A stretch of 64,000 bases of DNA from IMGVR_UViG_3300022698_000267:1-64000, one strand, 5' to 3'; counted from the first letter of the stretch, positions 22,757 through 60,810 are shown. Translations and numbers: made by a program. The notes: generated by a model from the letters alone, not told the origin.

Positions 22757-22874
22757 AACTAGACCTCCATTTTAGAATAAATTATGCTTGTATTGGAATG
22801 TTTTTGAAAAAGCGAACTAAAACCTAAACAAAGTCTGTTCTATTTTTGTGTTTTACATTTCGGAGAATCAAAAT

Positions 22875-33800: not shown

Positions 33801-36800
33801 TCTCATCAATATAAGATATTGGAAAATCAAACTTATAACCAGAAGAAAGAATACTTTGTAAATCTGAATTCTTTACAAATTTAAAATAATCAGTGTCTTC
33901 ATTTTCTTTCTTGGTTCTTGGATTTATGAAGACTAAAATTTCCTCTGGATTTTCTTGTGTAAATATGAAGTTTCCAATACTATTAGAATAGCAAGTTCGT
34001 AGTGGAGTTAAATCTGTAGTTGCATATGTACAAACTTTAAATTGTTCTTCTGAATTTAAATCTTCTGATTTGAATAAGTATAGTTGTGGACCAGCATTTT
34101 CAAGAGGTGTAATAGTATTATTAGTAGTGTAAAGGTATGAATCTTCTGTCCCCATTGTAACTTTATGTATTGGGAAACAGAAGTTCTTCCTCTTTTTAAA
34201 GGTAGTGGATGATGAACTCCAATAATCTGGAGGATACACTGCAATTGGTAATTTGGAATATTGATTTGTAATGAATGGATGCAAATCATAAGCGATTATT
34301 GATATTAGATTACATGTATTGTAAATGATGAATTTATCTGAGTATTCGTCAGAATACGATAATCTAGTTGCATAGATATTCATTCCAATCTGTGTGAAAT
34401 CATCTGGAACTATAGAGTCTTCAATTCCTTCAAATCCATTAAGGTTATAACAATTCGTTTTATGTTTGTCCCTATAGAAAACTAGTTTTCTGTAGGTCAT
34501 GTGATCCATACCAGTTATTGAAAAAGATACACCTGTAGTTGCACTATAATCTTCTGCCGGTTCATTACAAAAAATAGTGAAGTAACTGGAAGAGGGTAGT
34601 GTTTTAAACTCCATCGTAAAATTATCTTCATCTGTAGGTATATCGAAATATAGGCCTTTAGTACTTTGTGAAAAATAGAAGGAATTTGAATTAACATTAT
34701 ACTCAGTCACATTATAGGCAGTGGCTAATGTAAGAATATTGGAAGGAACTATGTAAAGAGATAGAAAAGAACTAGCACTTTGACTCATTGGAGTTTCAGA
34801 ACTGACTATTTTTATTGTGCTAGTGCCTGGTTTGACATAAGTAGATTTTTCATACGTTACATATCCACAATTTTCGAATTCTTTAGTATTAGATATAACT
34901 GGTCTATTGGAATCATAACCCAAATCAGAAAATGAATCAGTTTTGTAATACTCTGCATTATTTCCTAAAATTCCATTTGCATCGTATTGTGTTATTGGTC
35001 TAAAATCCTCTTTTACTCTTACTCCAGCATTTATGGAAGGCATTTTTACAAATATTACATTTCCACAATCCACATCAGAAGACAATTCGTGATTTAAATC
35101 ATCCAATATTAAGAAGTCTAAAGATGTGTCATCTTCATCGGTAACGTCTATATTTCTATCCACACAAAATGGCAGATTTATTTTTGTGTAAACATTGGAA
35201 ACATCTTCTAATGTTCTATTGTAAACTTCTACTTCAAAATCCAGAAGTTCAGATTTTTGTTTTGCTATGAAGTAGGCATATAAAGTTATCCCAGTATTTT
35301 CTATTTCAGGATACAAGTTTTTTAAGGATTCTTTATGTGGAAATATTGTCCAATAGTGCTTTCTTTCATTTAATCCTATCTCTGTTGTAATGTCGTCTCC
35401 AAATTGATCTATAGACCATGGAATTATATGCATGCCATCTGTTAAATACAAACTCTCAATATTTACATATCTTCTGGTAGCTCCAGTCCCAATGTACTTA
35501 GGAACATATAGATGTGGATCAGTATATACATCGGAATTTTGAATAACCATATAGACATAGTAATCAGTAAAATCTTTATCCGCTATTTTCATTGTAGTTT
35601 CTGGAAGAAGAAGTGTTATATCTCTTTTGATATCTTCATGAATAAAATGTCTATAAGTTTCTTGATCCTCTTCTGTTACTATAATATCATCTGTTCCTAA
35701 ATGATCTTTCACTACATTTTCGGAATCATAGTCACCTTCTGAGGATGGAACATTAGAAAGTTTTCGTAACTTCCAAGTTTCTAATGAATCTATGATTAGA
35801 GAATATGGATTATCATTAATTGGAAATGAGAAAAATTCGTCGGAAACAAATACTGAAGATCCTTGGAAAGTTAAGGTTAAATCTGCTATATTTTCCGTAC
35901 TTTGAATAGTATTTTCAAATAAGTAAGTGTCTGAACCTATAGTATAACCAGTAGTATTATCAGCATATATCCACTTGGTTGTTACATAATCGTACGAAGA
36001 TTGAGCTGCAGTTTTCATCAAATAGAATTTTGTTCGATGATCAGAATGAGCTGGATCTCTAGAAAATGTAGAAAGGGCCATGAACTCGTCACTATTTAAT
36101 GTTAGAGACCTTCCAGAAATATCAATAACATCGCCAGTTTTTAAAATAGCAGATATATACAATTTATAATAGTCTTCTACTGGATTGGCATATTGTCGCC
36201 ATATATTGTCTATGTCACCAGCTCTATTAAAATCGTGTTTCGTTTCAGATCTTGTGCTATAATCTAAGAAATGAAATCCTGTTTGATCATCCACATAGAT
36301 TGGAACAACATAAATGTCACCTCTTTCATACATGTTATTAAGATAATTGGAATTTCTAATCCGATAATAGTAACTTACTATATCACCTTCATTTCCTTCT
36401 TCTATGTTTCCAACTATTTTTCCAGCTGTATAATTTGCTTCTGTGACCCATATACCATATTGAAATTGTGAAAGTGTATCTACATTTGCAGAATTTACAT
36501 TTTGAACCAAGTCGACCTTTGCAGCATCTGCTTCAGTCGTGATTAAATTTGTAACCTCTTGATTAGTTCCATCATAGTTAATACAAGATGATGATATCCA
36601 ATTCATTATCTCGCCACTATTGTTTGTTATTAACCCAGCGTATGGAACTACATATCCATACATTGTGGATTCTAGTGTCATTTTCATTCCAGACCAGTAG
36701 TTACCATGATCATTTATATTGAATATCACAATTCCAGATCCAGCGGTCAGAGAAGATATATCATATTCGAAAGCCACATAGTAATGAGTTCTATCTTCAG

Positions 36801-38154
36801 TTGATAGTGGTGCTGTATAAGCATATGATGCTTCATTTACTGTACTAGTTGGTGTATATTCCACACCATCTATAAATAAATGTGATGTGATACTTGCTTG
36901 ACTCTGTCTGGTTTTTATAGCTACTTTTAATGTTGGTGAATTTGGCCAATACAAGTATGCTATAAATTGCAGCTGTTTAGAATCTTCAGTTACATTAAAA
37001 GGCATTAGGTTAATATAGGGGTCGAGGATTGCACCGGTAGGAGGAGTAGTAGAGTATATATAGTCTCTTATAAATGCACCCCTATCATTTATACGAACAA
37101 TACTTGTTGTATCTGCAAATCTGGTTAAACTGGATGGGAATTGAAGTTTAATTGGCTTAACTGGAATATCTGTGGGTAAACGCATTGCTTTTATCTTTTT
37201 ATACTGAATGGTAAAATAATCAGAGTCTGAATATCCAAGATCAGCAACATCCTCTTCACCATAAAGATATTTCAATTTAATATGGTTATCGTTCGAAAAT
37301 TTATAGTATGAATCAAAAAATTTATGAGCACCTGGGAATGCTTTAGTTGCATTTGGAGCACAATCAAGGTATCGAATTGCTTTTGCTGCATTCGGTTGAC
37401 CATCTGATGTTATTTTATAGTAAAGTTCTCCGTTTAAACCCGAAAACCCATTATAATCGAAAGCAGTATTATTTTCCCCACTACTTGTTATCGTTACTAA
37501 AGCAGAACTTTCAACCGTTGAGTCATCGGTATCACATCCAGGATACTCAGAAGTTTTCGAAAAGATTCTAGAATACTTGTAATTTATAACTTCTGGTGAT
37601 ACAGGACTTATTAAATTTAAAGCTATTGTATTACTATTTGATATTGTAGACTGTGAAAAGGATGAAGAAGCCGGATTATCTGGAGTGTCCATGTCATACG
37701 TTATTGTATAGGTTCCATTAACAACATTTAATGGTTCTATACTGATATTAGAAGCACTTAAATCGAAAACTGTATATATTTTCCTTCCATGGTATGAAAC
37801 CAACCCATATAAATCTTTCGTTGCACTAGATGAATTAGACCAAGCAAAAGATATCGAATACTTTTTCTCTGCTTCTGTATATGTAAAAGCAGAGGTTATT
37901 GCTCCAGATGCAACAGTACCAATCTCATCAGCCATAGTATGCACATATTTGCTGTAAGAAGTTTGGTATCTTTCTCCAAGACTTTCGAACATTAAATCTA
38001 AGTTTAAACTTCCTGGAGGAGTATGTGTTTTTGCCCACAAAGTTGCTGTATTAAAATCATTAATTTCTTTCTTCACATTGCCATTATGATCTAGTATTTG
38101 TAAAGAAACTACACCTTTCACCTTGACATTTTGTAAGTCTAAAACAGATTTCAT
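30826..38154 (-). CDS. Very large tail fibre/baseplate-like protein with DUF2341-like and LamG-like regions and a C-terminal poly-Ser tail
   Basis: 2442 aa, Tyr/Ser/Thr/Asp-rich; KGVVSLQILD..GNV N-terminus, IWVKI, FNFYDDF, LYVDGEL, terminal SSSSS... Confidence 0.65.
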   Translation of the reverse strand: MKSVLDLQNVKVKGVVSLQILDHNGNVKKEINDFNTATLWAKTHTPPGSLNLDLMFESLGERYQTSYSKYVHTMADEIGTVASGAITSAFTYTEAEKKYSISFAWSNSSSATKDLYGLVSYHGRKIYTVFDLSASNISIEPLNVVNGTYTITYDMDTPDNPASSSFSQSTISNSNTIALNLISPVSPEVINYKYSRIFSKTSEYPGCDTDDSTVESSALVTITSSGENNTAFDYNGFSGLNGELYYKITSDGQPNAAKAIRYLDCAPNATKAFPGAHKFFDSYYKFSNDNHIKLKYLYGEEDVADLGYSDSDYFTIQYKKIKAMRLPTDIPVKPIKLQFPSSLTRFADTTSIVRINDRGAFIRDYIYSTTPPTGAILDPYINLMPFNVTEDSKQLQFIAYLYWPNSPTLKVAIKTRQSQASITSHLFIDGVEYTPTSTVNEASYAYTAPLSTEDRTHYYVAFEYDISSLTAGSGIVIFNINDHGNYWSGMKMTLESTMYGYVVPYAGLITNNSGEIMNWISSSCINYDGTNQEVTNLITTEADAAKVDLVQNVNSANVDTLSQFQYGIWVTEANYTAGKIVGNIEEGNEGDIVSYYYRIRNSNYLNNMYERGDIYVVPIYVDDQTGFHFLDYSTRSETKHDFNRAGDIDNIWRQYANPVEDYYKLYISAILKTGDVIDISGRSLTLNSDEFMALSTFSRDPAHSDHRTKFYLMKTAAQSSYDYVTTKWIYADNTTGYTIGSDTYLFENTIQSTENIADLTLTFQGSSVFVSDEFFSFPINDNPYSLIIDSLETWKLRKLSNVPSSEGDYDSENVVKDHLGTDDIIVTEEDQETYRHFIHEDIKRDITLLLPETTMKIADKDFTDYYVYMVIQNSDVYTDPHLYVPKYIGTGATRRYVNIESLYLTDGMHIIPWSIDQFGDDITTEIGLNERKHYWTIFPHKESLKNLYPEIENTGITLYAYFIAKQKSELLDFEVEVYNRTLEDVSNVYTKINLPFCVDRNIDVTDEDDTSLDFLILDDLNHELSSDVDCGNVIFVKMPSINAGVRVKEDFRPITQYDANGILGNNAEYYKTDSFSDLGYDSNRPVISNTKEFENCGYVTYEKSTYVKPGTSTIKIVSSETPMSQSASSFLSLYIVPSNILTLATAYNVTEYNVNSNSFYFSQSTKGLYFDIPTDEDNFTMEFKTLPSSSYFTIFCNEPAEDYSATTGVSFSITGMDHMTYRKLVFYRDKHKTNCYNLNGFEGIEDSIVPDDFTQIGMNIYATRLSYSDEYSDKFIIYNTCNLISIIAYDLHPFITNQYSKLPIAVYPPDYWSSSSTTFKKRKNFCFPIHKVTMGTEDSYLYTTNNTITPLENAGPQLYLFKSEDLNSEEQFKVCTYATTDLTPLRTCYSNSIGNFIFTQENPEEILVFINPRTKKENEDTDYFKFVKNSDLQSILSSGYKFDFPISYIDETYANSKYTSLEVTPLEVASSTIVLLEDSMTENVITKVTTRFSEIEQSFYGAKDSDVSVSYKISKNTATESLDNDPMLWSLASRYELSSGIQSVDSETTITKPISLADSQLLAKDDGKRCNLVFDDTQIPVEDITRLGMYSLHGGHYNYKNTTGIYNSYPTLYDEPEFDSYILEDFVAPTKLNWNIHYNSGSPVDFSNDSIKITQYSTDITSVDSIMPGSEIDDYYIQYKFRFSDQFDATYGNYFRISPFYIDNDHRFEIILRYEKVSNVSTIEGRLHRAYANTSVKFSGDTTDRIYQHTNEWFILKIHRVGQSMGVKLWLEENEESNAQSWSASLESYLTSPTKIYVDFYFGTSSEARQYMELDSILYLETKKDMKLYTAPMLKIIDETDSSEKFFCIDPQYGVPKEITPIVSILTNDEIDNNLNSRIIGKFGESKTFAGFNSLLSQYNNGDYKLSIGFLVYTKISSITYIHSLSMQMELNDTSHYSDVDWCYVNIPSQYTSNTKSAIVGDVSSFILKVYNPNDVDITNYTLKLDVEDYSFGTFSSGIVAVVNSIRIPTLYEAEDGSITTNMANFNGKGIWVKIELLTAGQIVDIELTDYVNSYTALDLFNFYDDFTTLDTSLWDISYDFTESSVSATEEEYATDSHCSERVLAAQYPIPLRLNYNNQLEIMYDDTDRTQIHGIAMKNALSNDLQYEIKFHTELQGNTTMYQPPKCLVYMIMDSNTSTTLKNHGILGDRTTNLDDGWREYDQFFRTCLRTGYSSHSTSITLASAEEADLYLGNGNSGGETISFFWRVDEWYDWPNCEMARRNNHWILSSSSSSLTCSFNGGGTLSTTMSYLPRAADRGIAIDGSQNMFICISVDYDNNRADLYVDGELADSITSGVTVTPDVTDYLRLGFINPDHRCAIAVVRVYDQYFNKDQVDMIYLYDTSKMWNYVNKFLSEMKLVTNLEIGFDEDIDISSSSSFSSSSSSSSSSSNSSSSSSSASGA

Positions 38155-49269: not shown

Positions 49270-51954
49270 ATGACCGAGTACACAATGTTCACTAAAGAAG
49301 AATTTGAAGGGTTTCTGGAAAGTAATTTCCCTGGTTTATGGTCCACAGCAGACACTCCTTATTCGAAAGAGCATATCTACTCAATTCAAACTGATAAAGA
49401 TGATATAACAATTCGAATTTTTTCTTCTGTGGATGTTAGAACCAATCATTCTAGAGATATTGGAAAAGATGCTATTCGATGTATTTTATGGAACGATATT
49501 GAAAATCGTCCAATTGGTAAAACCACTAGAGTTAATAGGGTTGGTGTTGTTTGGGAAAGAATTCTTTCTAGAATTTCTGTTCTTCGAAAAAGGGCTATCA
49601 AAACTCAAGTAGTTGATTACGAGTACATAAAAGCTTTACTTTCTAGTCCTTCAAATAATGGTAGTACTTTTGTAACCTCTTTACGAGATCAGTTAGAGAA
49701 GAAACATTTCTTATCTCCAGCCCAATTGAATTGTATTATTGGAAAGGGAACTGGAAGAACTACTATTGAGCAACAGGTCCTTAGAAAAGATCCAAATTTT
49801 CAAAAGCGTTACATTAGTCAAGAAGATGAATCTATTGAAAAAGAGGTAGAAAAAGAAGAAAAACTAGTTGTTAGAACAAAAGAACTAGTTGATAATAGTT
49901 TATTAGTGGAAGATACTCAAAATGAAGATAACATCGAATTAATTTCCACAGATGGATACCCTTATCCATATGATACTTTTAACAAATTACAATCTAGAAT
50001 TTTCCCTTACATTAAAGAAGATTGTAATGTTGTTGTTGCAGGAAATACAAGCTCTGGAAAAACAATATGTGCAGAATTGTTAATGTTTGCGACTTTGGCT
50101 AAAGGAAGAAAAGTGATTTATCTTAGCCCATTAAAAGCATTAACTCAAGAAAAATATGAAGATTGGCAAAAGACATTTTCTGGTTATAAAATTGTCATCA
50201 TGACAGGTGATTATCAAATGACTGCTGCTCTTCAGAAGAGAGTAGCCGCTGCAGATATTATTCTGATGACCTCTGAAATGCTGGATAGTCGTACGAGGAT
50301 GATTGAAGCAGAGAAGAACTTCTGGTTTTATGAAGTTGGTCTTTTAGTAGTTGATGAAGTTCATATTCTTGGACAGGCTGGTGATAGAGGACATCCAATG
50401 GAAGTTGGAATTATGCGATTTACCAAAGTTAATCCAACCTGTCGTGTTGTTTTCCTTTCAGCAACGATGCCAAATGTCAATGAATTAGGTCTTTGGTTAG
50501 CTATTTTGAATGAAAAGAAAACAGTATCTATTACAAGTCATTGGCGACCAGTTGAACTAACGAAGCATTATATCACTTACGAAGAGGTTCGATTTGGTAG
50601 CGGATTTATGAATTATAAAGCTACACAATCTAGAAAAATATCTGCAGCAGTCAGAGTAATTGCCTCTAAGAAGGATCAGAAATTTTTAGTATTTTGTCAT
50701 GATAAAAATGCTGGAAGATTACTGATGAATACCTTTTCCAAACTTCATAAGGAAGATATTCGTTTTCATAATGCGGATTTGAATTTGAATGAGAGACAAG
50801 AAATTGAAAATGCCTTCATTCATGGAACATTACGAGTTTTAGTAAGTACTCCTACACTTTCATGGGGTAGGAATGTTCCTGCTAGAAACGTGATTTCAGT
50901 AGGAGTACATCGTGGACTTAGTGAGATAGATGAGCTTGATTTAATTCAGATGGCTGGACGTGCAGGTCGTCCTCAATATGATAAAGAAGGTGATGTCTAT
51001 TTCTTAGTTCCAAAACAGGAAGAATCTAAGTGGAAAACCCTAATAGAGAATCCAAAGGATATAACATCTGGATTAAAAAGGATTGATGCCTTAGCCTTTC
51101 ATATTCTTGGAGGTGTACATGTAGGAGATATTTACCAAGCAAATGATGCTTTTGTGTGGTACGAAAGATCATTGGCTCACTTGCAAAATGCAGAGTTTAC
51201 AAAAGATGATCTAGAAGAAGTTTTGAACACTCTTTTAGAATATAAAATGTTAACACGTTCTGAAGATAATAAATTAATTCTTACTGGACTTGGAAAGGTC
51301 AGTGTCTTCTTTTATTTTAGTCCTTTTGATGTCTATCATTGGTTTAAAAATTTCGATGATCTTATTCGAATTGATCCAAATCTTCTAGAGGATGACTACA
51401 CAGTTTCTTGGGCAATGTCAGCTATTCCGAGTAATGATCCTGGATTCTCTCGAAAGAACATTGTTGAAGATTATTTAACTTCTTGGACTGCTATACTTAG
51501 AGGAAGGGGTGTAAATCTTTCTAAGACGGGTGTACCTTTGGTCAATGTTCTTCCAAATGTTATAGCTTTCTATGATTGTTTATCAGGCAATGAGGGACAA
51601 CGTGATCCATTGATTGGAGCCATTTCTAGATCAATTAAACAGGATATTGGAAGATCATCTAATGCTATATCTTTAATAGATTCAATGTATGCCAGATGGA
51701 GCAGAAGAAATTTAACTGTTTCTAATCTTTTTGACGTTCTAGAATTAAGAACGAAGTATGGAGTTGGTTATGAGTTGTTAGACTTAGTAAGAATTCCAAA
51801 TATCGGTGCAAGAAGAGCAGCTAAGTTATACAATGAAGGCTATAAAACTTCAGAGGATTTAAAAAAGGCTACTGAGGAAGATCTTGCTTCTATTCTTGGT
51901 GAAAGAACAGCTCTTAGGATAAAAAGATTCTTTCGAAAAGAGAATCAGACATAA
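49270..51954 (+). CDS. Ski2/Hel308-like SF2 helicase with C-terminal HhH and an extra N-terminal domain
   Basis: GNTSSGKT, SPLKAL, LLVVDEVH, LSAT, STPTLSWGRNVPA, QMAGRAGRP, and LVRIPNIGARRA.KLY..G. Confidence 0.9.
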   Translation: MTEYTMFTKEEFEGFLESNFPGLWSTADTPYSKEHIYSIQTDKDDITIRIFSSVDVRTNHSRDIGKDAIRCILWNDIENRPIGKTTRVNRVGVVWERILSRISVLRKRAIKTQVVDYEYIKALLSSPSNNGSTFVTSLRDQLEKKHFLSPAQLNCIIGKGTGRTTIEQQVLRKDPNFQKRYISQEDESIEKEVEKEEKLVVRTKELVDNSLLVEDTQNEDNIELISTDGYPYPYDTFNKLQSRIFPYIKEDCNVVVAGNTSSGKTICAELLMFATLAKGRKVIYLSPLKALTQEKYEDWQKTFSGYKIVIMTGDYQMTAALQKRVAAADIILMTSEMLDSRTRMIEAEKNFWFYEVGLLVVDEVHILGQAGDRGHPMEVGIMRFTKVNPTCRVVFLSATMPNVNELGLWLAILNEKKTVSITSHWRPVELTKHYITYEEVRFGSGFMNYKATQSRKISAAVRVIASKKDQKFLVFCHDKNAGRLLMNTFSKLHKEDIRFHNADLNLNERQEIENAFIHGTLRVLVSTPTLSWGRNVPARNVISVGVHRGLSEIDELDLIQMAGRAGRPQYDKEGDVYFLVPKQEESKWKTLIENPKDITSGLKRIDALAFHILGGVHVGDIYQANDAFVWYERSLAHLQNAEFTKDDLEEVLNTLLEYKMLTRSEDNKLILTGLGKVSVFFYFSPFDVYHWFKNFDDLIRIDPNLLEDDYTVSWAMSAIPSNDPGFSRKNIVEDYLTSWTAILRGRGVNLSKTGVPLVNVLPNVIAFYDCLSGNEGQRDPLIGAISRSIKQDIGRSSNAISLIDSMYARWSRRNLTVSNLFDVLELRTKYGVGYELLDLVRIPNIGARRAAKLYNEGYKTSEDLKKATEEDLASILGERTALRIKRFFRKENQT

Positions 51955-53978: not shown

Positions 53979-54701
53979 ATGAATACAGAAACAGGGGTCA
54001 TCGTTGTTGGTGATCAAACTATAGGGTATACCGAGAGACTAACATGCTTACGGTGGGATATTCCTGCAGATGTTGTTACTGAAAGATCAGCATATACAGA
54101 AGATCCCTTCTATCTTTTTTACACTACAAGGTATTCTACGCAGAATTACATCCTTACAACGTACTCTACCAGATGGACCTCTTATGTAGTTGAACAACAA
54201 ACATATTCAGAAAAGTATATCATTCTAGATTATGCCAAAAGAGAAGTTACAGAAAGACACTATTATTACTATCCAGATAGTGCAAACAGATTCTTATTCG
54301 TTCAAGGTCTTTTAACTAATACTCCATTGTTACTAAAGTATCCAAAATATTTCAATTGGAATTACATTCCACAAATTGTTAATCCTAGATTTGATATCTG
54401 GTCATTTTATCCTTTAGAAAAAAATGATTTAACTTTAAAAATAGTTGGAAGTTCTGGAACGATTTTATATTACAATTATGGAATATCACAGGATTCTTTT
54501 TTGATAGAAGAATTTCCTCAATCACCACCTCCACCACCTCCTGTGGGTTCAATACTTCCACCTGGACCATTGGATCCTCCACCTTGTAGATACAGGATTA
54601 CAGTTTATGTTAATCATGTATTTGAAAATGAAGAGACAATTAATTGCTATCTAACAGTTTTTGATTCGAAAGGAAATTATTTGAAGGATGGAATGTGGTA
54701 A
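53979..54701 (+). CDS. Hypothetical Tyr-rich protein with a poly-Pro insert
   Basis: 240 aa with RBS ggag. Confidence 0.55.
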   Translation: MNTETGVIVVGDQTIGYTERLTCLRWDIPADVVTERSAYTEDPFYLFYTTRYSTQNYILTTYSTRWTSYVVEQQTYSEKYIILDYAKREVTERHYYYYPDSANRFLFVQGLLTNTPLLLKYPKYFNWNYIPQIVNPRFDIWSFYPLEKNDLTLKIVGSSGTILYYNYGISQDSFLIEEFPQSPPPPPPVGSILPPGPLDPPPCRYRITVYVNHVFENEETINCYLTVFDSKGNYLKDGMW

Positions 54702-54760
54702 ATAATGATTATTTTCTAAAAACTTAAAGGTGATTTAAAGGGGATAAGGAGCAGAACATT

Positions 54761-54988
54761 ATGGATTTTCATTCTTTGTGTAGTAGACTAGATGATTTTC
54801 TAGAAAGAATTCCACCTAGTTTAGATAGTAATGACAGTAGAATTCAGTTTTTGTCTTCGATTAAGGATTTCAACAAGACTCTTTCTGAAATAAATTTCGC
54901 TTCTTTATCGGAAGATCAAAATTTTATCATAAAAACGAAGTTGGGTTTGTTAGATAAAGCTTTTGATTTTCATTTGATGAATATATAG
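54761..54988 (+). CDS. Hypothetical protein
   Basis: RBS aaggag. Confidence 0.5.
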   Translation: MDFHSLCSRLDDFLERIPPSLDSNDSRIQFLSSIKDFNKTLSEINFASLSEDQNFIIKTKLGLLDKAFDFHLMNI

Positions 54989-55001
54989 GGAGGTACTAAT
55001 T

Positions 55002-55406
55002 TTGACAAAGCTATTGATTCCAAAAGTTAAAGAACAGGCCCTTAGAAATCCTGATGACACTCCACCAGATCAAACTGTAGATGAAAATCTTCCTCCAGAT
55101 GATTCTGCAATGGATGAGACTCTACAGGAAGATACAATGGTCGAAAAAATAACAGTGGTTGCTTACGATGAAGATCAAAGGATTGCACGTTTATTGGACT
55201 ACATTAAACAACTAAGTGACCAAGGATACAGTTTTCGAATTGTCGTAGATCCGGAACATGAAGAGACTATGAAAGCTTTTCATTGGGAAGGTGAAGGAAT
55301 TGATGAAATTCTAAGTGTTGACATGGAAGAAATTCCGATCAGTGAAGTTGACGTTTCGGGAGATGAAGAGGATATGAATCCTCCCCCTCCTCTCCCTGAA
55401 GAATAA
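55002..55406 (+). CDS. Acidic hypothetical protein
   Basis: RBS ggagg with a TTG start. Confidence 0.6.
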   Translation: MTKLLIPKVKEQALRNPDDTPPDQTVDENLPPDDSAMDETLQEDTMVEKITVVAYDEDQRIARLLDYIKQLSDQGYSFRIVVDPEHEETMKAFHWEGEGIDEILSVDMEEIPISEVDVSGDEEDMNPPPPLPEE

Positions 55407-55768
55407 TCTTTTTCATTCAATGAGTATCTGGATATCCCTGGTGGATCTACTAATTCTTTTTCCTTATTGTGGAAATTCTTTTCATTCCTCCTATAGAAAT
55501 CTTCGATACAAATCTTTTTAGACTACAAAAACTTCCTGTAATTTCTTTTCATTTCTAGAGGTTTTATTATTTTCTATATGAAAAAATTGTAATTCTATAG
55601 ATTTGTAACTTCTGCTTTTCTTATATGTAAGGAAATTTTTAATCCTTTATTCTACTTTCCAATTATTTCTAAAGGTGGAAAATCTAAGTTTTAACTTTTT
55701 GATTACTTCGTTTATTTGTTTTGTGTGATAGTTTAAAAAACCTTGTTTAAATTCCTGAGGAGGTTGAG

Positions 55769-55906
55769 TTGAAAAGAGCTGTAACTTACACTAGAAATGA
55801 ATGTCCTAAATGCCATTCTAGTTTATCCATCAGAAATACTTGATCTGCTACTATCAAAATCTGCAGGGCTTGTGGATATAAGGAAATAGATAAGAGAGAA
55901 AGATAG
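55769..55906 (+). pseudogene. Small zinc-ribbon ORF interrupted by an in-frame TGA
   Basis: RBS gaggagg with TTG start; MKRAVTYTRNECPKCHSSLSIRNT*SATIKICRACGYKEIDKRER; TGA at 55841. Confidence 0.5.
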
Positions 55907-55938
55907 AATTTCATAAATCCTAATTTTGGAGGGTTCTC

Positions 55939-56235
55939 ATGCCTACTTGGTTAAAGTACATTTTTGCTGGTGGTGCCGTTTTAAAGATTTTGATTTCTTC
56001 AATTCCAAAAGCACTTCAAGATAAGAAGTTGACGATTGATGAACTTGCATCTCTCTTGAAGGAAATTTGTTCCATTTTTGGTTGGACTTTAGAAATTCAA
56101 ATTCCAGACAAATTTTCGGATACTTATTTGAATGTTGCTGGAGACATTGGAGCATATAATCCTCCAGTTAAACCACCAACTAGTACACAAGAAGTCAAAC
56201 CAGATAACGAACAAGAACAAATTATCGAAGGATGA
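55939..56235 (+). CDS. Hypothetical protein
   Basis: RBS ggagg; 98 aa. Confidence 0.6.
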   Translation: MPTWLKYIFAGGAVLKILISSIPKALQDKKLTIDELASLLKEICSIFGWTLEIQIPDKFSDTYLNVAGDIGAYNPPVKPPTSTQEVKPDNEQEQIIEG

Positions 56236-56424
56236 TTATCATTTACAACTTTTTGAAAAGGGAATTTTTGTGAAGCCTAGAACTATTAACAGGAATAAAG
56301 AAAGAAGAATTGAAGAAAAGAAAAATAAAGAACTTGAAGAATTTTTGGTTTCTAAAAAGAATTCCAAAAAGAGAAAGTTAAAGAAGAGAGGAATTGTCGA
56401 AGACGAAGTTACAAATAAAAAGGA

Positions 56425-57327
56425 TCATGTTCCAGAGAAGAAAGGTTTGGGAACTCTGGCAGATGTATGGCCTAAGTTACAGACATGATTTTTTAGAATT
56501 TTGTTGATAGCCTCTCTCTCATCACAATTGATTTTACGAATTAACTCTTTTTTGCAGTGCATGCAATAGAGACCTTTATACTGGGTTTCACTTACAATCC
56601 TAGATCGAAAATTTCTACGTTTTCCATCCACACATATCATTCTGAATCTTCCACTTATATTAACCTTTTTTCTTATTTGTTTGTGCCATAAGATTATTCC
56701 ACATTTTCTTATATTCAGTTCTATCTCATTTGCTTCTATTCCAATTTTTAGACCAATTTGTTCTGGAACTCTTTTGTTTTCCACGTATTCACAATAAAGA
56801 AGATCTGAAAAAGTTTCATATCCATGTTTATTAGCAATTTTACATAGAATTTTATTGTTGTGAACAATTTTTGGATCTATACAATGACATTTATTTGTAT
56901 AACCTATATAACCGAAACAATGATGTTTCTTTATAATTTTTCTACAGTCTAAATTTTCTTTCCACTCAGTAATTAGAACTTTTCCACAATGTCTACATCG
57001 AACGTTTGAGAATTTATTTTCCTTTATACTTTTGGAAATGAATATTCTCTCTTTTTTATCAGGACCAAGTATTCTAAATATTCCTTTGGTATTTTTTATA
57101 AAGTTTGCACCACCACTTGTTTTTCTTGTAACACCCAAAGCGTCCATTTTATTAGTGTCTAATGAAAAACCCAGTTTCTTTGAAAAACTACGTACTCCCC
57201 AACCTTCTTCTTCATACAGACAATAAATCATATCTGATACTGTTTCATATCCTAATGTATCTGCTGCATTTTGCCATTCTTCTAATGTATATCCAAAATT
57301 CTTTTCTGTTAGACAGGTAACAAGCAT
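56425..57327 (-). CDS. Internally duplicated Cys/His-rich putative DNA-binding protein
   Basis: Two similar halves: GYETVSDMIYCLYEE/GYETFSDLLYCEYVE, GIFRILGPDKKER/GRFRMICVDGKRR, CRHCGKVLI/CMHCKKELI. Confidence 0.65.
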   Translation of the reverse strand: MLVTCLTEKNFGYTLEEWQNAADTLGYETVSDMIYCLYEEEGWGVRSFSKKLGFSLDTNKMDALGVTRKTSGGANFIKNTKGIFRILGPDKKERIFISKSIKENKFSNVRCRHCGKVLITEWKENLDCRKIIKKHHCFGYIGYTNKCHCIDPKIVHNNKILCKIANKHGYETFSDLLYCEYVENKRVPEQIGLKIGIEANEIELNIRKCGIILWHKQIRKKVNISGRFRMICVDGKRRNFRSRIVSETQYKGLYCMHCKKELIRKINCDEREAINKILKNHVCNLGHTSARVPKPFFSGT

Positions 57328-57393
57328 TCTATTTCCCCTATGAATCGCAAAACATTATTTATTATCAAATTTTAGTAATAACAGGGAATTGTC

Positions 57394-57687
57394 ATGTCTA
57401 CCAACGACGAAATTGAAAAAGATTTACATTTGGATGAATCTGCTAACGAGGCCTGGAATGAATTTATGCATGTAAATGGGATTGATGGAAATACATTTCA
57501 ATTTAGTGTTTCTATTCTTGATGTGGTTGATAAGATAAAAAAGTTCTTTGCAGAAGAGGAAAAGAAAGAAACAAAATGGATTTATGAATGTTGTAAAGAA
57601 CCTCCAGTTAAGGAGGAAGGATGGGTTCCAGATCCCTATTGTCCGAAACATGGAGGTCTTCTAATTCGAGTTGATTCAGAGGAATAA
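57394..57687 (+). CDS. Hypothetical protein with C-terminal CC...CPKH
   Basis: 97-aa ORF. Confidence 0.55.
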   Translation: MSTNDEIEKDLHLDESANEAWNEFMHVNGIDGNTFQFSVSILDVVDKIKKFFAEEEKKETKWIYECCKEPPVKEEGWVPDPYCPKHGGLLIRVDSEE

Positions 57688-57717
57688 TACTAAAAATTTG
57701 GAAGGTGACACATAATC

Positions 57718-58023
57718 ATGAAGATAGCATATTTTCCACAACTTTGTCCTATTTGTACTAAAAAGGACTCTTCTTTTAAATCCATAGATTCTACTGAGAT
57801 TATTTTGTTGAAGAGAATCGAAGCTTTGCAAACTGGACTACGAAAACTTGCTGCATCCAGAGATAGGGCTAGAAACAGACTTAATGTATTTGGTGATCTT
57901 CCATTGGTTAGCAAGTTTATGAACTTGACAGCTGAAGAGACTAAAAATGTAGGTAAATTGAAAGTGTTTGAAAGAGTTTTGAAAGAAAATTTGGACTTAC
58001 GAAAACAAATTGAGGCTATATAA
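57718..58023 (+). CDS. Hypothetical protein
   Basis: 101 aa, directly upstream of the actin gene. Confidence 0.55.
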   Translation: MKIAYFPQLCPICTKKDSSFKSIDSTEIILLKRIEALQTGLRKLAASRDRARNRLNVFGDLPLVSKFMNLTAEETKNVGKLKVFERVLKENLDLRKQIEAI

Positions 58024-58024
58024 A

Positions 58025-59032
58025 ATGGGAACAACTTACTATTGTGGTATTGATTTGGGAACAAGTAGAACTAGTATTGCAACATCAACAGGGATACGAT
58101 ACACGACGGATTCGGTGGTTGGTTATGCTAAAGACCTTATATCAAGTAAGAGATTTGGGGCTAATTACCTTCTTGGAAAAGATGCTATTGAAAATAGACT
58201 TTCTTTAAATATGGTTTGGCCATTGAGCAATGGTGTTATTAACAAAGACGATTCTTTGGCTATGGATACAGTTAAGTTAATTTTGAAGAATCTATTAGCT
58301 TATGCCATACCAGATAAAAAAGATGACGATAATCTAATGGTTGCTATTGGAGTTCCTGCACAAGCAGGAGTTGAAAATAAAGCCGACATTCTTAAAATTG
58401 GAAATGATTTAGTTTCCAAGACCTTGATTGTATCTGAACCTTTTGCAGTAGCTTATGGACTGGATCGTTTTGACGAAGTTTTAATGATTGACTGTGGTGC
58501 TGGAACAGTAGATTTAGTAAGGATTTATGGTTCTTTTCCAGAAGAGAAGGATCAAATCACTTTAACAACTGCTGGTAACTTTTTAGACGAAACATTGAAA
58601 GAAGCAATTTTGAAAAATCATCCAGAAGTACAACTGACAAACAACATTGTAAAGAAACTAAAAGAAAAGTATGGTTTTGTTACGGTTTCTGAGCAAATCA
58701 AACACACTTTCAGAGAAGGTGGTAAGCCAAAGACATATGATATAACTTCACAAATGTATGAGGCTTGTCTTAAATTTACAGCTCCAATTTGTGAGGCTGT
58801 TGAAAAATTGATTTCCGATTTTGATCCAGAGTTTCAAGAAAAACTAAGAAACAATATCATTGTTGCTGGAGGTGGTTCCAGATTAAAAGGTATTGACAGA
58901 GAGATTGAGAAAGGTCTAATCCCTTATGGAGGTGGGAATGTTATAACTGTTCAAGATGCGGAATTTGCAGGTGCTGAAGGTGCTTTAAAGATGGCTCTTG
59001 AAATGCCAGAAGAATATTGGGGTAAATTGTAA
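58025..59032 (+). CDS. mamK: Actin-like ATPase, MamK-like subfamily
   Basis: GIDLGTS, SVVGYAKD, IGVPA, VSEPFAVAYGLD, IDCGAGTVD, DQITLTTAGNFLDE, NIIVAGGGSRLKG and GALKMALEMPEEYW are collinear with MamK as recalled (SEPF.VGYGL, DQVTL.KAGN, GAL.LA.ELP..YW). Start is ATG 58025. Confidence 0.8.
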   Translation: MGTTYYCGIDLGTSRTSIATSTGIRYTTDSVVGYAKDLISSKRFGANYLLGKDAIENRLSLNMVWPLSNGVINKDDSLAMDTVKLILKNLLAYAIPDKKDDDNLMVAIGVPAQAGVENKADILKIGNDLVSKTLIVSEPFAVAYGLDRFDEVLMIDCGAGTVDLVRIYGSFPEEKDQITLTTAGNFLDETLKEAILKNHPEVQLTNNIVKKLKEKYGFVTVSEQIKHTFREGGKPKTYDITSQMYEACLKFTAPICEAVEKLISDFDPEFQEKLRNNIIVAGGGSRLKGIDREIEKGLIPYGGGNVITVQDAEFAGAEGALKMALEMPEEYWGKL

Positions 59033-59057
59033 AATCGAAATTGAAGGAGTATGTCAT

Positions 59058-59228
59058 ATGAGTAAAAATTCGGTATTAGAAGCAGAAGATGTTGAACGCA
59101 AAATAGAAACTTGTCCTGGCATACTTGGGTCTGTTGGTGAAACTTTAATTTGTTCTTTAACTAAATCTGCCTGTATTAAATCTAAAGGCAAGTGTATTTT
59201 TCTTCATTGGATGAATGACAATAAATAG
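59058..59228 (+). CDS. Small Cys-rich protein
   Basis: RBS aaggag before ATG 59058; four Cys. Confidence 0.5.
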   Translation: MSKNSVLEAEDVERKIETCPGILGSVGETLICSLTKSACIKSKGKCIFLHWMNDNK

Positions 59229-59242
59229 GAAGGAGACTTAGA

Positions 59243-59473
59243 ATGAGCTACAAAGAACTAAATGATTTTGAGTTAATTCCCGAAAATGCTGAAATAAAAA
59301 TCTATAAGAATTGGATTCCTGTCCAAGAATATGAACATGGAAAATTGATTGGGAAGCCTGTTGCCGAATATAACATTCCTGCTAGAGTTAAACAGCAACT
59401 TCCAAAGTCCAATCGTTCTAATGCTGATGCAATAAGATTTAGAAAACCACCGCATCTTAGAGAGAAAAAATAG
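59243..59473 (+). CDS. Hypothetical protein
   Basis: RBS aaggag. Confidence 0.55.
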   Translation: MSYKELNDFELIPENAEIKIYKNWIPVQEYEHGKLIGKPVAEYNIPARVKQQLPKSNRSNADAIRFRKPPHLREKK

Positions 59474-59482
59474 GAGGACACT

Positions 59483-59842
59483 TTGGGAAGAGTTAATATG
59501 AAAGAAGTTCTTTCTAATCTTGAAATGTCACCTGATTCTTTCGATTCTGTTTCTAAATGCAGAGATTTTAGATTGGCATCGAAGAACTTGGATCTTTTTA
59601 AATCTGATGTTCGGAAGAAAAGAAGACAACTTGCCAAGAAATATCATCCAGATATTTCTGGGGATGTAAATTCTTCTAGAATGCAGTTAATCAATCATAT
59701 GGTAGAGATTGTTGAAAAATTAGCTATAAGACCTCCGATTAGAAGACCCCTACCTGGAATAACGATGGTTTTTCAACACCGTTCTGGAAATGGAGCAGTG
59801 TCTTTCACCATGCGTACTCAGTTTAATTCTGCCCGACATTGA
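59483..59842 (+). CDS. J-domain-like protein
   Basis: VRKKRRQLAKKYHPD...MQLIN; RBS aggagg. Confidence 0.7.
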   Translation: MGRVNMKEVLSNLEMSPDSFDSVSKCRDFRLASKNLDLFKSDVRKKRRQLAKKYHPDISGDVNSSRMQLINHMVEIVEKLAIRPPIRRPLPGITMVFQHRSGNGAVSFTMRTQFNSARH

Positions 59843-59946: not shown

Positions 59947-60092
59947 AATTAAAGGGCTTGAAAGGTTGTTCAGAATACCATGGGTTCGATCCCCATTTTT
60001 CCAGCCAAAAATTTGGAAAATAGCCTAATTGGTTAAGGCACTTGACTGATAATCAAGAATTTAATAATCAACCTTTTTCCCATCCTTTAATT
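59947..60092 (+). ncRNA. Array unit 1: scaffolded, circularly permuted tRNA-like RNA (break in variable loop; anticodon GAT)
   Basis: T arm atggg-ttcgatc-cccat (59980-59996); ttttcca-G-CCA; linker aaaatt; tggaaaa; D arm gcct..aggc; anticodon arm cttga-ctGATaa-tcaag. Closing stems aattaaagg/cctttaatt and aaaggttg/caaccttt. Confidence 0.85.
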
Positions 60093-60098
60093 CTAATA

Positions 60099-60229
60099 TT
60101 TTAGGAATAGAGCTTGTAAGTGATTACAGATTAGCTCAATTGGATAGAGCATCAACCTCAAAAGTTGAATGTTGTGGGTTCAATTCCCATATCTACAAAA
60201 TATTACTTTCGTCTATTCTATTCCTAAAA
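60099..60229 (+). ncRNA. Array unit 2: scaffolded tRNA-like RNA, unpermuted, joined via a truncated acceptor (anticodon CAA, no CCA)
   Basis: agat; D arm gctc..gagc; tcaac-ctCAAaa-gttga; T arm gtggg-ttcaatt-cccat; atct. Closing stems ttttaggaataga/tctattcctaaaa and aagtgat/attactt. Confidence 0.8.
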
Positions 60230-60403
60230 AATTTAAAATTTTGAGAAGCTCAATAGTTATTACAGAGTATAATACGGAACGCTTGGTTGGAGGTTCAAGT
60301 CCTCCACCCCCGACCAAATTTGACGGGGGTTAGCTCAATTGGTAGAGCAGGTGTAAAAATTACAAAGAAATGACTATTTAAAAATTTCTCAAAATTTTAA
60401 ATT
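60230..60403 (+). ncRNA. Array unit 3: permuted tRNA-like RNA opened in the anticodon loop (YrlA-type geometry)
   Basis: acgct-tggtt; T arm ggagg-ttcaagt-cctcc; acccccg-A-CCA; linker aatttga; cgggggt; D arm gctc..gagc; ggtgt (pairs with acgct). 18-bp closing stem aatttaaaattttgagaa/ttctcaaaattttaaatt. Confidence 0.85.
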
Positions 60404-60414
60404 CTAAAAGCATA

Positions 60415-60462
60415 AAAATATACTAATAATATATTGTAGTTGAAAATTTTGTTCTTTGAAAA
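60415..60462 (+). promoter_or_regulatory. Second copy of the array leader (dup of 59887-59928) with a boxA-like element
   Basis: aaaatatactaataata(c/t)attgtagtt(g)aaaattttgttcttt occurs twice; TGTTCTTTGAAAA at 60450-60462. Confidence 0.6.
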
Positions 60463-60626
60463 TAAGCTAGAAGGCTCAGAAGGTGTTACAGAAATATGGA
60501 GGTTCGAGCCCTTCCCTGGCCACCACATTTATGGCCAGGTAGCCGAATTGGTACAGGCACTTGACTATGGATCAAGCAATACATTTTACACATCTTGTAA
60601 CCTTCTTCTAGCTTATTTTGAAAGAA
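60452..60626 (+). ncRNA. Array unit 4: permuted tRNA-like RNA (break in variable loop; anticodon ATG)
   Basis: T arm ggagg-ttcgagc-ccttc; cctggcc-A-CCA; linker catttat; ggccagg; D arm gcc..ggc; cttga-ctATGga-tcaag. ~22-bp closing stem with one mismatch. Confidence 0.85.
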
Positions 60627-60653
60627 TAAATTTTGTTCTTTGAGATGTAAATA

Positions 60654-60805
60654 AAACTAGAGGGCTAAAAAGTTATTACAGAAAATTTTGCCTAGTAAGC
60701 AGAAGATGTGGGTTCGAATCCCATACCCTCCACCAAATCTTATGGGGGGTTGGCTCAATTGGTAGAGCTCAAATTATGAAATAACTTTTATCCAACCTTT
60801 GGTTT
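60654..60805 (+). ncRNA. Array unit 5: permuted tRNA-like RNA (break between D and anticodon arms; anticodon AGT; G3:U70)
   Basis: tttgc-ctAGTaa-gcaga; agat; gtggg-ttcgaat-cccat; accctcc-A-CCA; linker aatcttat; ggggggt; gctc..gagc. Stems aaactagagg/cctttggttt and aaaagttat/ataactttt. Confidence 0.85.
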
Positions 60806-60810
60806 ATAAT

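What the first reader, a model, noticed from the sequence alone, without database searches (positions are those of the whole stretch)
58025..59032. Phage-encoded MamK-like actin
Seen: all actin-fold ATPase motifs are intact, and the sequence is collinear with the magnetosome actin MamK as I recall it (SVVGY.KD, SEPF.V.YGL, DQ.TL..AGN, C-terminal P..YW), more so than with MreB or ParM. No other mam genes are present. Established: some large phages encode cytoskeletal proteins (PhuZ/TubZ tubulins, AlpC actin) to position DNA or capsids. Inference: a MamK-type filament co-opted for phage DNA or virion transport, and a possible hint at the host lineage. Flanking small ORFs may be adaptors.
Basis: partly seen in the sequence, partly recalled or inferred. 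Interest (0 to 1): 0.7.

Follow-up and report, generated by a model that had tools for sequence, protein, structure and literature searches.

The report
Jumbo-phage MamK-family actin with adaptor
A 274-kb phage carries an intact gene for a bacterial actin of the MamK family, paired with a small upstream gene whose conserved tail is predicted to dock on that actin, so the phage probably builds its own filament system, though its cargo and its host remain unknown.

Summary
Its best matches are the MamK profile (381 bits; MreB 62, BeeR 188) and the solved MamK structures (E 2e-80).

The window is the first 64 kb of a 273.6-kb virus record with capsid, terminase and portal genes. That record has no mam genes and no tubulin.

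In trees the protein sits in a strongly supported MamK-family clade. This clade also holds a magnetosome-cluster MamK of Riflebacteria and many non-magnetotactic proteins (Desulfonema, cable bacteria, Beggiatoaceae). It is separate from the canonical alphaproteobacterial MamK. Within it, about 16-20 proteins from phage-like contigs group together. Their position does not point to a host.

The new result is the 101-aa ORF directly upstream (57718-58023). It belongs to an unannotated family found next to MamK-family genes in phages and bacteria. Members share a C-terminal helix motif, while their N-terminal parts differ (membrane anchor, receiver domain, ATPase, phage-specific heads).

A complex model places this helix in the actin's hydrophobic groove (score 0.70; best control 0.00), as ParR sits on ParM.

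The most likely reading is a two-part phage filament system with an adaptor. Its cargo is unknown and polymerisation is untested.

The parts
58025..59032 (+). MamK-family actin-like ATPase, 335 aa
   Evidence: The ORF is intact. NCBIfam MamK scores 381.4 bits, against MreB 61.8. PDB MamK matches at E 2e-80 over the full length. The nucleotide-binding motifs are invariant. It is the only copy in the genome. It falls in clade X of the MamK family.
57718..58023 (+). 101-aa coiled-coil partner (adaptor candidate). It has a short N-terminal part, a helical middle, a conserved SKFMN motif (about residues 64-70) and a conserved C-terminal helix KLKVFERVLKENLDLR (residues 80-95).
   Evidence: It is homologous to the ORF directly upstream of the actin gene in L002, L003 and L005 (phage-like contigs), L011 and L014 (Riflebacteria), L010 (Electrothrix), L012 (Beggiatoa), L013 (Zetaproteobacteria) and L015 (Planctomycetota). 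No Pfam, NCBIfam or PHROG family matches it. The complex model scores 0.70 against a best control of 0.00, with residues 64-101 at the interface. It is the only such gene in the genome.
58011..58027 (+). Junction of the two genes. GAGG lies 11 nt before the actin ATG, inside the end of the partner gene. The partner's TAA stop (58021-58023) is one base before the actin ATG (58025).
   Evidence: Read directly from the sequence. The related loci have the same arrangement, with gaps of -3 to +4 nt. This suggests one transcript and coupled translation, which is an inference.
57701..57720 (+). Ribosome-binding-like GGAAGGTG ahead of the partner's ATG (57718)
   Evidence: Read directly from the sequence. 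The consensus promoter and terminator scan found no more sites than in shuffled sequence, so the transcript limits are unknown.

Best explanation
The phage encodes a two-gene filament module. The first gene (57718-58023) makes a small coiled-coil protein. The second (58025-59032), translated right behind it, makes an ATP-binding actin of the MamK family, which by family membership should polymerise into filaments. The small protein's conserved C-terminal amphipathic helix is predicted to insert into the hydrophobic groove between actin subdomains IA and IIA. ParR binds ParM at this site, and arcadin-2 binds crenactin there. Across the family this helix is constant while the N-terminal part is swapped. 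It is a membrane anchor in Beggiatoa and Zetaproteobacteria, a receiver domain or an AAA ATPase in other bacteria, and a phage-specific head in phages. The helix therefore most likely recruits whatever the head binds to MamK-type filaments or filament ends. The phage version would then link the phage's own filaments to a phage-specific target, such as the genome, a replication site or capsids, to position it in the infected cell.

What is shown: gene integrity, family assignment, phage context, conserved gene pairing and modular partner architecture.
What is predicted by a model with controls: the binding and its site.
What is inferred: polymerisation, dimerisation of the partner, the cargo and the benefit to the phage.
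For: - Family and integrity.
- Phage context. Six relatives have phage-like neighbours, including thymidylate synthase, Dam methylase, dCMP deaminase, RNA ligase, endolysins and an intein-bearing helicase.
- Tree: clade X is supported at 100/100. The window sits in a starred 9-row clade (98/81) inside a 16-row group from phage-like contigs (86/88). One origin for all 20 such rows is not rejected (AU p 0.435).
- Partner homology and position. Of 6,962 ORFs in 89 loci, the 11 strong HMM hits (E below 1e-10) are all upstream of a clade-X actin on the same strand, and 10 are within 35 nt of it.
- Metagenome loci: 36 of 60 complete loci have a motif-bearing ORF within 600 nt upstream.
- Complex model: score 0.70 against a best control of 0.00. 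That mark was reached by 58 of 80 solved complexes and 2 of 110 mismatched pairs. The runs agree in at least 52% of contacts, and the partner's pLDDT is at least 56. The interface is partner residues 64-101 on actin residues 116-124, 134-136, 144, 149-150 and 323-335.
- Groove conservation: several groove residues are at 0.9-1.0 frequency in clade X, namely K119, V136, Y144, F149, D150, M323, E326 and P328.
- Swapped heads.
- Precedent: PMC5173319 reviews groove binding by C-terminal peptides (ParM:ParR 4A62; crenactin:arcadin-2 5LY3).
- Active-site constraint: a related phage actin carries an intein exactly in the phosphate-2 loop, as expected for a constrained active site.
Against: - No experiment shows that this protein polymerises or that the two proteins bind. 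The complex score is the model's own confidence, obtained with my own alignments.
- The window's partner has only about 25 residues ahead of the helical part, which is little with which to hold a cargo.
- Groove binders can also sequester monomers or depolymerise filaments, as arcadin-2 does.
- No cargo candidate was found. There are no centromere-like repeats near the operon, and no second protein in the genome has the motif.
- Some clade-X genes lack the partner, namely Desulfonema magnum (L009) and 17 loci from one metagenome.
- One row in the 'phage' group (L096; GC 49%; partner fused to an AAA ATPase) may be cellular.
Confidence: 0.55

Rival explanations
1. The upstream protein is a regulator of assembly rather than a cargo adaptor. 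By occupying the groove used for longitudinal contacts, it caps, sequesters or depolymerises the actin, as arcadin-2 does with crenactin. As a coiled-coil dimer, it could instead nucleate or bundle the two strands. The phage pair would then be a self-contained, timed filament with no linked cargo.
For: The predicted binding site is the IA/IIA groove. Arcadin-2 uses this site to depolymerise crenactin (PMC5173319). The window's partner has almost no N-terminal head. No cargo-like element was found.
Against: In bacteria the same helix is fused to membrane anchors, receiver domains and an ATPase. That fits recruitment better than pure sequestration. Other phage versions carry a head of about 70 aa plus a basic linker.
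Confidence: 0.2
2. It is a ParMRC/AlpACS-type segregation system. The actin pushes copies of the phage genome apart or to daughter cells, for example in a plasmid-like carrier state, and the partner is the DNA-binding adaptor.
For: It has the same two-gene logic and the same predicted groove contact as ParR-ParM (PMC5173319). The prophage CGP3 uses the AlpC actin with the AlpA adaptor for viral DNA transport (PMC5539076). The C-terminal half of the actin gives a weak hit to a PHROG 'partition protein' family (phrog_691, E 1.6e-10). The L003/L005-type partners have a strongly basic linker.
Against: The actin is not of the ParM or Alp families. The partner matches no Pfam, NCBIfam or PHROG family, including DNA-binding ones. 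No iterated repeats flank the operon. The bacterial homologues of the partner are membrane-anchored or signalling proteins rather than DNA binders. Searches of the window turned up no sign of a plasmid or lysogenic lifestyle, but the rest of the genome was not annotated.
Confidence: 0.13
3. It is a host-takeover tool. The phage actin, or its partner's conserved helix, engages the host's own MamK-like filaments by copolymerising, capping or re-routing them, rather than building a separate phage structure.
For: The phage protein is 55-60% identical to cellular clade-X proteins. The partner's binding motif and the groove residues are conserved between phage and cellular versions, so cross-binding is plausible.
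Against: The phage genes form their own long-diverged group rather than recent captures from one host. The phage keeps both components. The host is unknown, so it is not known whether it has such filaments.
Confidence: 0.09
4. The finding is an artefact or a passenger. The gene is either bacterial DNA mis-joined to a phage contig or a recently captured gene with no function in the phage.
For: IMG/VR records are metagenome assemblies. No sequencing run could be listed to check read support.
Against: Synteny with an independent contig covers eight genes around the pair. Phage hallmark genes lie in the same window. Composition is even. Tetranucleotide usage matches the other phage loci that carry the pair (r 0.68-0.89) and no bacterial locus. 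A conserved clade of 16-20 members with intact motifs argues for long-term selection.
Confidence: 0.03

Closest known systems
MamK, the magnetosome actin of Magnetospirillum (PDB 5JYG, 5LJV, 5LJW)
   Same: Same protein family and fold. It aligns over the full length (E 2e-80), shares all nucleotide-binding motifs and the C-terminal P..YW, and is the best structural match.
   Different: Identity is only about 38-41%. The phage protein lies in a separate, strongly supported clade. It is encoded by a phage with no magnetosome genes. Its neighbour is a small groove-binding partner, whereas magnetospirilla use the acidic MamJ/LimJ proteins. Its scores against the NCBIfam profile are given under Membership tests.
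Clade-X 'MamK-like' proteins of Desulfonema, Electrothrix, Beggiatoaceae, Zetaproteobacteria and Planctomycetota, plus the magnetosome-cluster MamK of Riflebacteria
   Same: These are the nearest relatives, at 55-61% identity. Most have the same upstream partner family with the same C-terminal motif. mamK-like genes in Beggiatoaceae and Thiomargarita have been noted before (bioRxiv 10.1101/2022.04.11.487978).
   Different: They are cellular genes. Their partners carry membrane anchors, receiver domains or an ATPase instead of the phage-type heads. The function of the non-magnetotactic members is unknown.
ParM-ParR-parC of plasmid R1, and AlpC-AlpA-alpS of the Corynebacterium prophage CGP3
   Same: Both consist of an actin-like filament and a small adjacent adaptor. 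ParR's C-terminal peptide binds the IA/IIA groove of ParM (4A62, as reviewed in PMC5173319), which is the site predicted here. AlpC is a precedent for a phage-borne actin that moves viral DNA (PMC5539076).
   Different: The actins belong to different families (no ParM hit). The adaptor is unrelated in sequence and matches no known family, including DNA-binding ones. The gene order is reversed, with the partner first. No centromere repeats were found.
PhuZ/TubZ tubulins of nucleus-forming jumbo phages
   Same: A large phage encodes its own cytoskeletal polymer, presumably to organise the infected cell (PMC7950403, PMC8314001).
   Different: PhuZ is a tubulin, not an actin. This genome has no tubulin-family gene. 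Whether it forms a phage nucleus was not tested.
Coiled-coil Mad proteins (Mad20/23/25/26) that work with MamK and Mad28 in Desulfovibrio magneticus RS-1
   Same: They are small coiled-coil proteins encoded near mamK that interact with it and organise the cargo (PMC12748827).
   Different: No source gives the partner family a name, and it is not confined to magnetotactic bacteria.

Membership tests
MamK family (NCBIfam NF040964; actin-like ATPases related to the magnetosome actin) | Actin-fold ATPase with intact phosphate-1, connect-1, phosphate-2, adenosine and connect-2 motifs | tested here: met
   The motifs are present and invariant in 26 relatives. They align residue for residue with solved MamK.
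MamK family (NCBIfam NF040964; actin-like ATPases related to the magnetosome actin) | The family profile is the best match and the score reaches the curated cut-off (400 bits) | tested here: inconclusive
   It is by far the best match (381.4 bits; next is BeeR at 187.6) but 19 bits under the cut-off. A MamK inside a Riflebacteria magnetosome gene cluster scores lower (371.6), and Desulfonema magnum scores 398.2. The cut-off therefore does not separate true members here.
MamK family (NCBIfam NF040964; actin-like ATPases related to the magnetosome actin) | Groups with MamK proteins in a tree | tested here: met
   It lies inside the MamK-family radiation, in clade X (100/100), together with a magnetosome-cluster MamK of Riflebacteria. 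Clade X is sister to the clade holding the alphaproteobacterial, Magnetococcales, gammaproteobacterial, SAR324 and Nitrospirota MamKs. MreB, ParM and Alp sequences were not in the tree, so their exclusion rests on profile scores.
MamK in the functional sense (magnetosome chain organiser) | Encoded in or with a magnetosome gene cluster (mamA/B/E/I/M/P/Q) | tested here: not met
   The whole 273.6-kb record has no MamP/Q/I/E/O homologues, no cation-efflux protein and no LemA.
MamK in the functional sense (magnetosome chain organiser) | Forms filaments that align magnetosomes | not testable with these tools
   This needs expression and imaging. A phage has no magnetosomes, so the role is not expected.
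ParM/Alp type II partition actins | Match to a ParM or Alp profile; an adjacent DNA-binding adaptor; centromere repeats | tested here: not met
   There is no ParM hit in NCBIfam. Alp7A_C gives only a sub-threshold hit (20.5 bits against 22), and there is a partial PHROG 'partition protein' hit. The partner matches no known family, including DNA-binding ones. No repeat array lies near the operon.
MreB (rod-shape actin), the name some sources give to relatives | Score above the MreB profile cut-offs | tested here: not met
   PRK13927 scores 61.8 bits against a cut-off of 293, and TIGR00904 scores 47.8 against 365.75.
BeeR (tubular actin of Verrucomicrobiota) | Score above the BeeR equivalog cut-off | tested here: not met
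   It scores 187.6 bits against a cut-off of 530. PDB 8R2N matches at E 1.2e-32, against 2e-80 for MamK.
Upstream partner family (unnamed; defined here) | Small protein encoded just upstream of a MamK-family gene on the same strand, ending in the motif K-x-x-[IVM]-[FL]-x-[KR]-[ILV]-[ILV]-x-[ED]-N-[ILV]-x-[LI]-R | tested here: met
   Window residues 80-95 are KLKVFERVLKENLDLR. The HMM E-value is 6e-20. The stop codon lies one base before the actin start.

The most novel reading that the evidence does not exclude
MamK-family filaments, in magnetotactic and non-magnetotactic bacteria alike, are coupled to their targets by a so far unnamed family of adaptors. These adaptors share one groove-binding C-terminal helix and carry exchangeable heads. 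A lineage of large phages has taken over the whole module, replaced the head, and uses it as a phage cytoskeleton of a third kind, beside PhuZ tubulin and AlpC actin. The same helix may be the 'missing' ancestral MamK adaptor that workers on magnetosomes have postulated (PMC10653835).
Probability: 0.35. Interest if true: 0.75.

Novelty: new variant of a known kind. Interest (0 to 1): 0.62.

Why it matters
Phage-encoded cytoskeletons are known from very few systems: PhuZ/TubZ tubulins and the AlpC actin. A MamK-family actin in phages does not appear in the GenBank phage collection or in the papers searched.

If the pair works as proposed, it adds a third kind of phage filament system. It also gives a compact, two-protein handle on how MamK-type filaments are coupled to cargo.

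The conserved partner helix matters beyond phages. It offers a testable binding motif for the many 'MamK-like' genes of giant and filamentous bacteria whose function is unknown. It may also apply to magnetosome clusters outside the Alphaproteobacteria, where MamJ is absent.

The result also corrects an expectation. A MamK-like gene is not evidence of a magnetotactic host.

Tried and rejected
- **Host prediction failed.**
  - No sequencing run could be listed for the locus.
  - Tetranucleotide usage resembles only other phage loci.
  - The tree does not nest the phage group in any bacterial lineage.
  - Cluster names gave a single habitat hint: one member of a related cluster comes from a Tara Oceans mesopelagic 0.1-0.22 um sample.
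  - CRISPR spacer matching was not feasible with the scans left.
- **Stop-codon recoding.** I considered it because the genome has a CTA-anticodon tRNA. Reading through TAG raises long-ORF coverage no more than reading through TGA or TAA does.
- **The A278D question.** This mutation stops MamK from polymerising, and the phage has Glu at the equivalent position. I checked whether that matters. Four of seven magnetosome-cluster MamKs also have Glu there, so it says nothing.
- **Downstream small ORFs (59058-59228 and 59243-59473).** They are shared only with the closest relative and were dropped as adaptor candidates.
- **Centromere-like repeats.** None were found around the operon.
- **Promoters and terminators.** The consensus scan found no more sites than in shuffled sequence.
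- **Naming the partner.** Pfam, NCBIfam, PHROGs, two profile searches of the protein collection and the ESM Atlas gave only generic coiled-coil look-alikes.
- **Relatedness of the other viral records.** The window's terminase and capsid proteins found nothing in the two other viral records with a MamK-family gene, both of which are fragments.
- **Quality of the actin model.** It is mediocre (pLDDT 74.9, TM 0.54-0.63 to MamK), so I rest the family call on sequence rather than on fold.

Full report
**The observation.** Window 58025-59032 (+) is an open frame of 335 codons from ATG to TAA. They align without shifts to solved MamK of Magnetospirillum over residues 5-334 (PDB 5LJW, 5JYG, 5LJV; E 2e-80). 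Pfam sees only the broad MreB_Mbl and Actin families. NCBIfam separates the subfamilies: MamK 381.4 bits, BeeR 187.6, MreB 61.8, no ParM hit. An AlphaFold model of moderate quality (pLDDT 74.9) finds MamK first (Foldseek E 2e-32), then BeeR, then MreB. In an alignment of 26 close relatives the nucleotide-binding residues are invariant.

**The setting.** The window is the first 64 kb of a 273,563-bp virus record rated 97% complete.
- A major head protein (8466-9569 -), a large terminase (20684-22756 -), a portal (22848-24599 +) and a helicase (49270-51954 +) lie in the same window.
- The genome has 20 tRNA genes, GC 35.8%, one copy of the actin and no tubulin-family gene.
- It has no magnetosome genes.
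- An independent 53-kb metagenome contig (L002) has the same eight genes in the same order across window 53979-59473, at 37-71% protein identity.

A chimeric join is therefore very unlikely.

**Relatives and tree.** The word-indexed search returned 5,822 proteins at E below 1e-10.
- The closest (63-71% identity) carry no names. Where DNA or gene lists were available, they sit among typical phage genes: thymidylate synthase, Dam methylase, dCMP deaminase, RNA ligase, endolysins, an intein-bearing helicase and many orphan ORFs.
- At 55-61% identity come proteins of Desulfonema, Desulfococcaceae, Electrothrix, Parabeggiatoa and other Thiotrichales, and Riflebacteria.
- One Riflebacteria gene (L011) sits in a true magnetosome cluster: FeoB, FeoA, small ORF, actin, magnetochrome protein, LemA/MamQ, MamI, MamE, MamO, cation-efflux protein. 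It scores 371.6 bits on the MamK profile, below the phage protein.
- A scan of species-representative genomes added 80 named loci. BLAST with the Riflebacteria markers flagged magnetosome neighbours at L041, L045, L072, L083 and L086 (Alphaproteobacteria, SAR324, Magnetococcales, Nitrospirota).
- A 238-row FastTree and a 94-row IQ-TREE agree on one point. All phage-context rows and all 55-61% relatives form one clade (100/100, long stem), which I call clade X. It is separate from the clade with the canonical MamKs and many Planctomycetota and Acidobacteriota proteins.
- Inside clade X the window falls in a starred 9-row clade (98/81), within a 16-row group from phage-like contigs (86/88). The large bacterial group is also one clade (98/90). 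The branching among the phage group, Riflebacteria and that bacterial group is unresolved.
- Holding all 20 phage-context rows together costs 4.4 log-likelihood units (AU p 0.435). I defined this group after seeing the first tree.

**The partner.** The ORF that ends one base before the actin start (57718-58023, 101 aa) is homologous to the ORF in the same position in several loci. These are L002, L003 and L005 (phage-like), both Riflebacteria loci, Electrothrix, Beggiatoa SZUA-411, Zetaproteobacteria PCbin4 and Planctomycetota OFTM248.
- Among 6,962 ORFs of 89 loci, the 11 strong HMM hits are all upstream of a clade-X actin on the same strand, and 10 of them abut it.
- Weaker hits with the same C-terminal pattern lie upstream of MamK-family genes of other clades: L030, L017, L059, L008 and Desulfamplus L064.
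- In 60 further metagenome loci with a complete gene and room upstream, 36 have such an ORF within 600 nt. Of the 24 without, 17 come from one metagenome.
- Profile searches of the protein collection returned about 40 members, all 'hypothetical'. Many lie on contigs whose lengths match those of actin hits.
- No Pfam, NCBIfam or PHROG family matches the partner.
- The shared part is a short SxFMN-like motif followed by a C-terminal helix, K-x-x-[IVM]-[FL]-x-[KR]-[ILV]-[ILV]-x-[ED]-N-[ILV]-x-[LI]-R, in which N91 and R95 are invariant.
- The N-terminal part varies:
  - a clear hydrophobic anchor in Beggiatoa and Zetaproteobacteria, and a shorter hydrophobic N-terminus in Electrothrix
  - a receiver domain in L105 and L163
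  - an AAA_22 ATPase in L096
  - a head of about 70 aa plus a basic linker in one phage group (L003, L005, L092, L166)
  - another head in the L007 group
  - only about 25 residues in the window and L002

**Predicted contact.** I folded the actin and the partner together with controls. The score was 0.70 and the best control scored 0.00. That mark was reached by 58 of 80 solved complexes and 2 of 110 mismatched pairs. The runs agree in at least 52% of contacts, and the partner's pLDDT is at least 56. The alignments were my own, so the calibration holds only roughly. The confident contacts join partner residues 64-101 to actin residues 116-124, 134-136, 144, 149-150 and 323-335. These actin segments are the helix after the third strand of subdomain IA, the hinge helix and the C-terminal helices. 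Together they form the hydrophobic groove between subdomains IA and IIA. Several of these residues are at 0.9-1.0 frequency in clade X. This groove is the known hot spot for partners of actins. ParR's C-terminus binds ParM there, and arcadin-2's C-terminus binds crenactin there, in that case blocking the longitudinal contact (PMC5173319).

**How it most likely works.**
- Shown: an intact MamK-family ATPase gene in a jumbo phage; a conserved, tightly coupled upstream gene; a constant C-terminal helix with exchangeable heads.
- Predicted with controls: the helix binds the groove.
- Inferred: the actin forms filaments, and the partner recruits its head's target to them or to their ends. The phage version, with no membrane anchor, would tie phage filaments to a phage-specific target.

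I give this 0.55. The main rival (0.2) is that the partner only regulates assembly. It gains weight from the near absence of a head in the window's copy. A ParMRC-like genome segregation role (0.13) shares the logic, but it lacks both a recognisable DNA-binding module and repeats. Interference with a host MamK-like cytoskeleton (0.09) cannot be judged without the host.

**Comparison with what is known.** Phage-borne cytoskeletal genes are known: PhuZ in nucleus-forming jumbo phages (PMC7950403, PMC8314001) and AlpC/AlpA in prophage CGP3 (PMC5539076). mamK-like genes in Beggiatoaceae and Thiomargarita have been noted (bioRxiv 10.1101/2022.04.11.487978). Coiled-coil Mad proteins that cooperate with MamK are described for Desulfovibrio magneticus (PMC12748827), and an ancestral MamJ-like adaptor has been postulated (PMC10653835). 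I found no report of a phage MamK-family gene. The GenBank phage collection has no relative, only one hit at 25% identity. IMG/VR holds two more viral records. L007 (114 kb, 53% complete) is in clade X, with a partner 1.7 kb upstream. L008 (50 kb, 55% complete) carries a Planctomycetota-type gene, which points to a second, independent acquisition. I rate the finding a new variant of a known kind.

**Host.** It remains unknown.

**Limits.** No MreB, ParM, Alp, BeeR or Mad28 sequences were placed in the trees. The 'phage' label of several rows rests on gene neighbourhoods, not on hallmark genes. One row (L096) may be cellular. The complex prediction is a model.

Noticed in passing
window 60014-60954 (+) and 61951-63555 (+): An array of tRNA-like elements lies just downstream of the actin operon. 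ARAGORN calls only tRNA-Leu(CAA) at 60124-60199. Rfam adds two more tRNA matches and three sub-threshold matches to YrlA (Y RNA-like; 27-37 bits against a gathering score of 69). A 65-nt unit (T-arm, spacer, D-arm) recurs four times. The next gene (534 aa, with a vWA-type DxSxS motif) has no sequence-level family hit, but the ESM Atlas places it with TROVE/Ro60 clusters (features 0.98; structure TM 0.64-0.86). Together they look like a phage Ro60/Rsr plus Y-RNA module.
   Followed up: partly
L166:2096-4528 (metagenome contig Ga0233431_1002920): A related phage-type actin (69% identical) is an 810-aa ORF. An intein of about 463 aa (CLAGDT...VFVHN, followed by T) is inserted exactly in the phosphate-2 loop, between DIGAG and TVD. 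The type-2 partner gene lies directly upstream.
   Followed up: partly
L105:1678-2685, L163:2699-3946, L096:1651-3093: In bacterial-looking metagenome loci, the partner's C-terminal motif ends much larger proteins. Two have an N-terminal response-regulator receiver domain, and one has an AAA_22 (ExeA-like) ATPase followed by repeats. This suggests that MamK-type filaments can be wired to signalling or ATPase modules.
   Followed up: partly
L098-L101, L103-L104, L107-L111, L113-L116, L126 (metagenome Ga0272440): One metagenome yields 16 different contigs, each with a clade-X actin gene (57-60% identical to the query; locus GC 30-41%). None has a partner ORF upstream. The contigs could come from many strains, or from many paralogues in one organism.
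   Followed up: no
genome C1:127867-127944 (outside the window) and C1:127867-143033: The genome has a cluster of 19 tRNA genes. One has a CTA anticodon (an amber suppressor, labelled 'Pyl' by ARAGORN). Reading through TAG does not lengthen ORFs more than reading through the other stops does, so recoding is not supported.
   Followed up: partly
window 59483-59842 (+): A 119-aa ORF two genes downstream of the actin has a weak J-domain match (DnaJ, E 0.0011) and contains the HPD tripeptide. A relative's contig (P0011) also has a DnaJ-domain gene about 4 kb downstream of its actin.
   Followed up: no
window 12234-19934 (-) and 30826-38154 (-): Two very large ORFs (2,566 and 2,442 aa) lie in the structural region. 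The first has no PHROG hit.
   Followed up: no
L008:5113-7044 (IMGVR_UViG_3300009370_000045): A second viral record carries a MamK-family gene of the Planctomycetota/Brocadiaceae type (45% identical to the query). It falls outside clade X. A weak partner-motif ORF (…LELLKVVFEENKQLRKDL…) lies 403 nt upstream. This suggests an independent capture by another phage lineage.
   Followed up: partly
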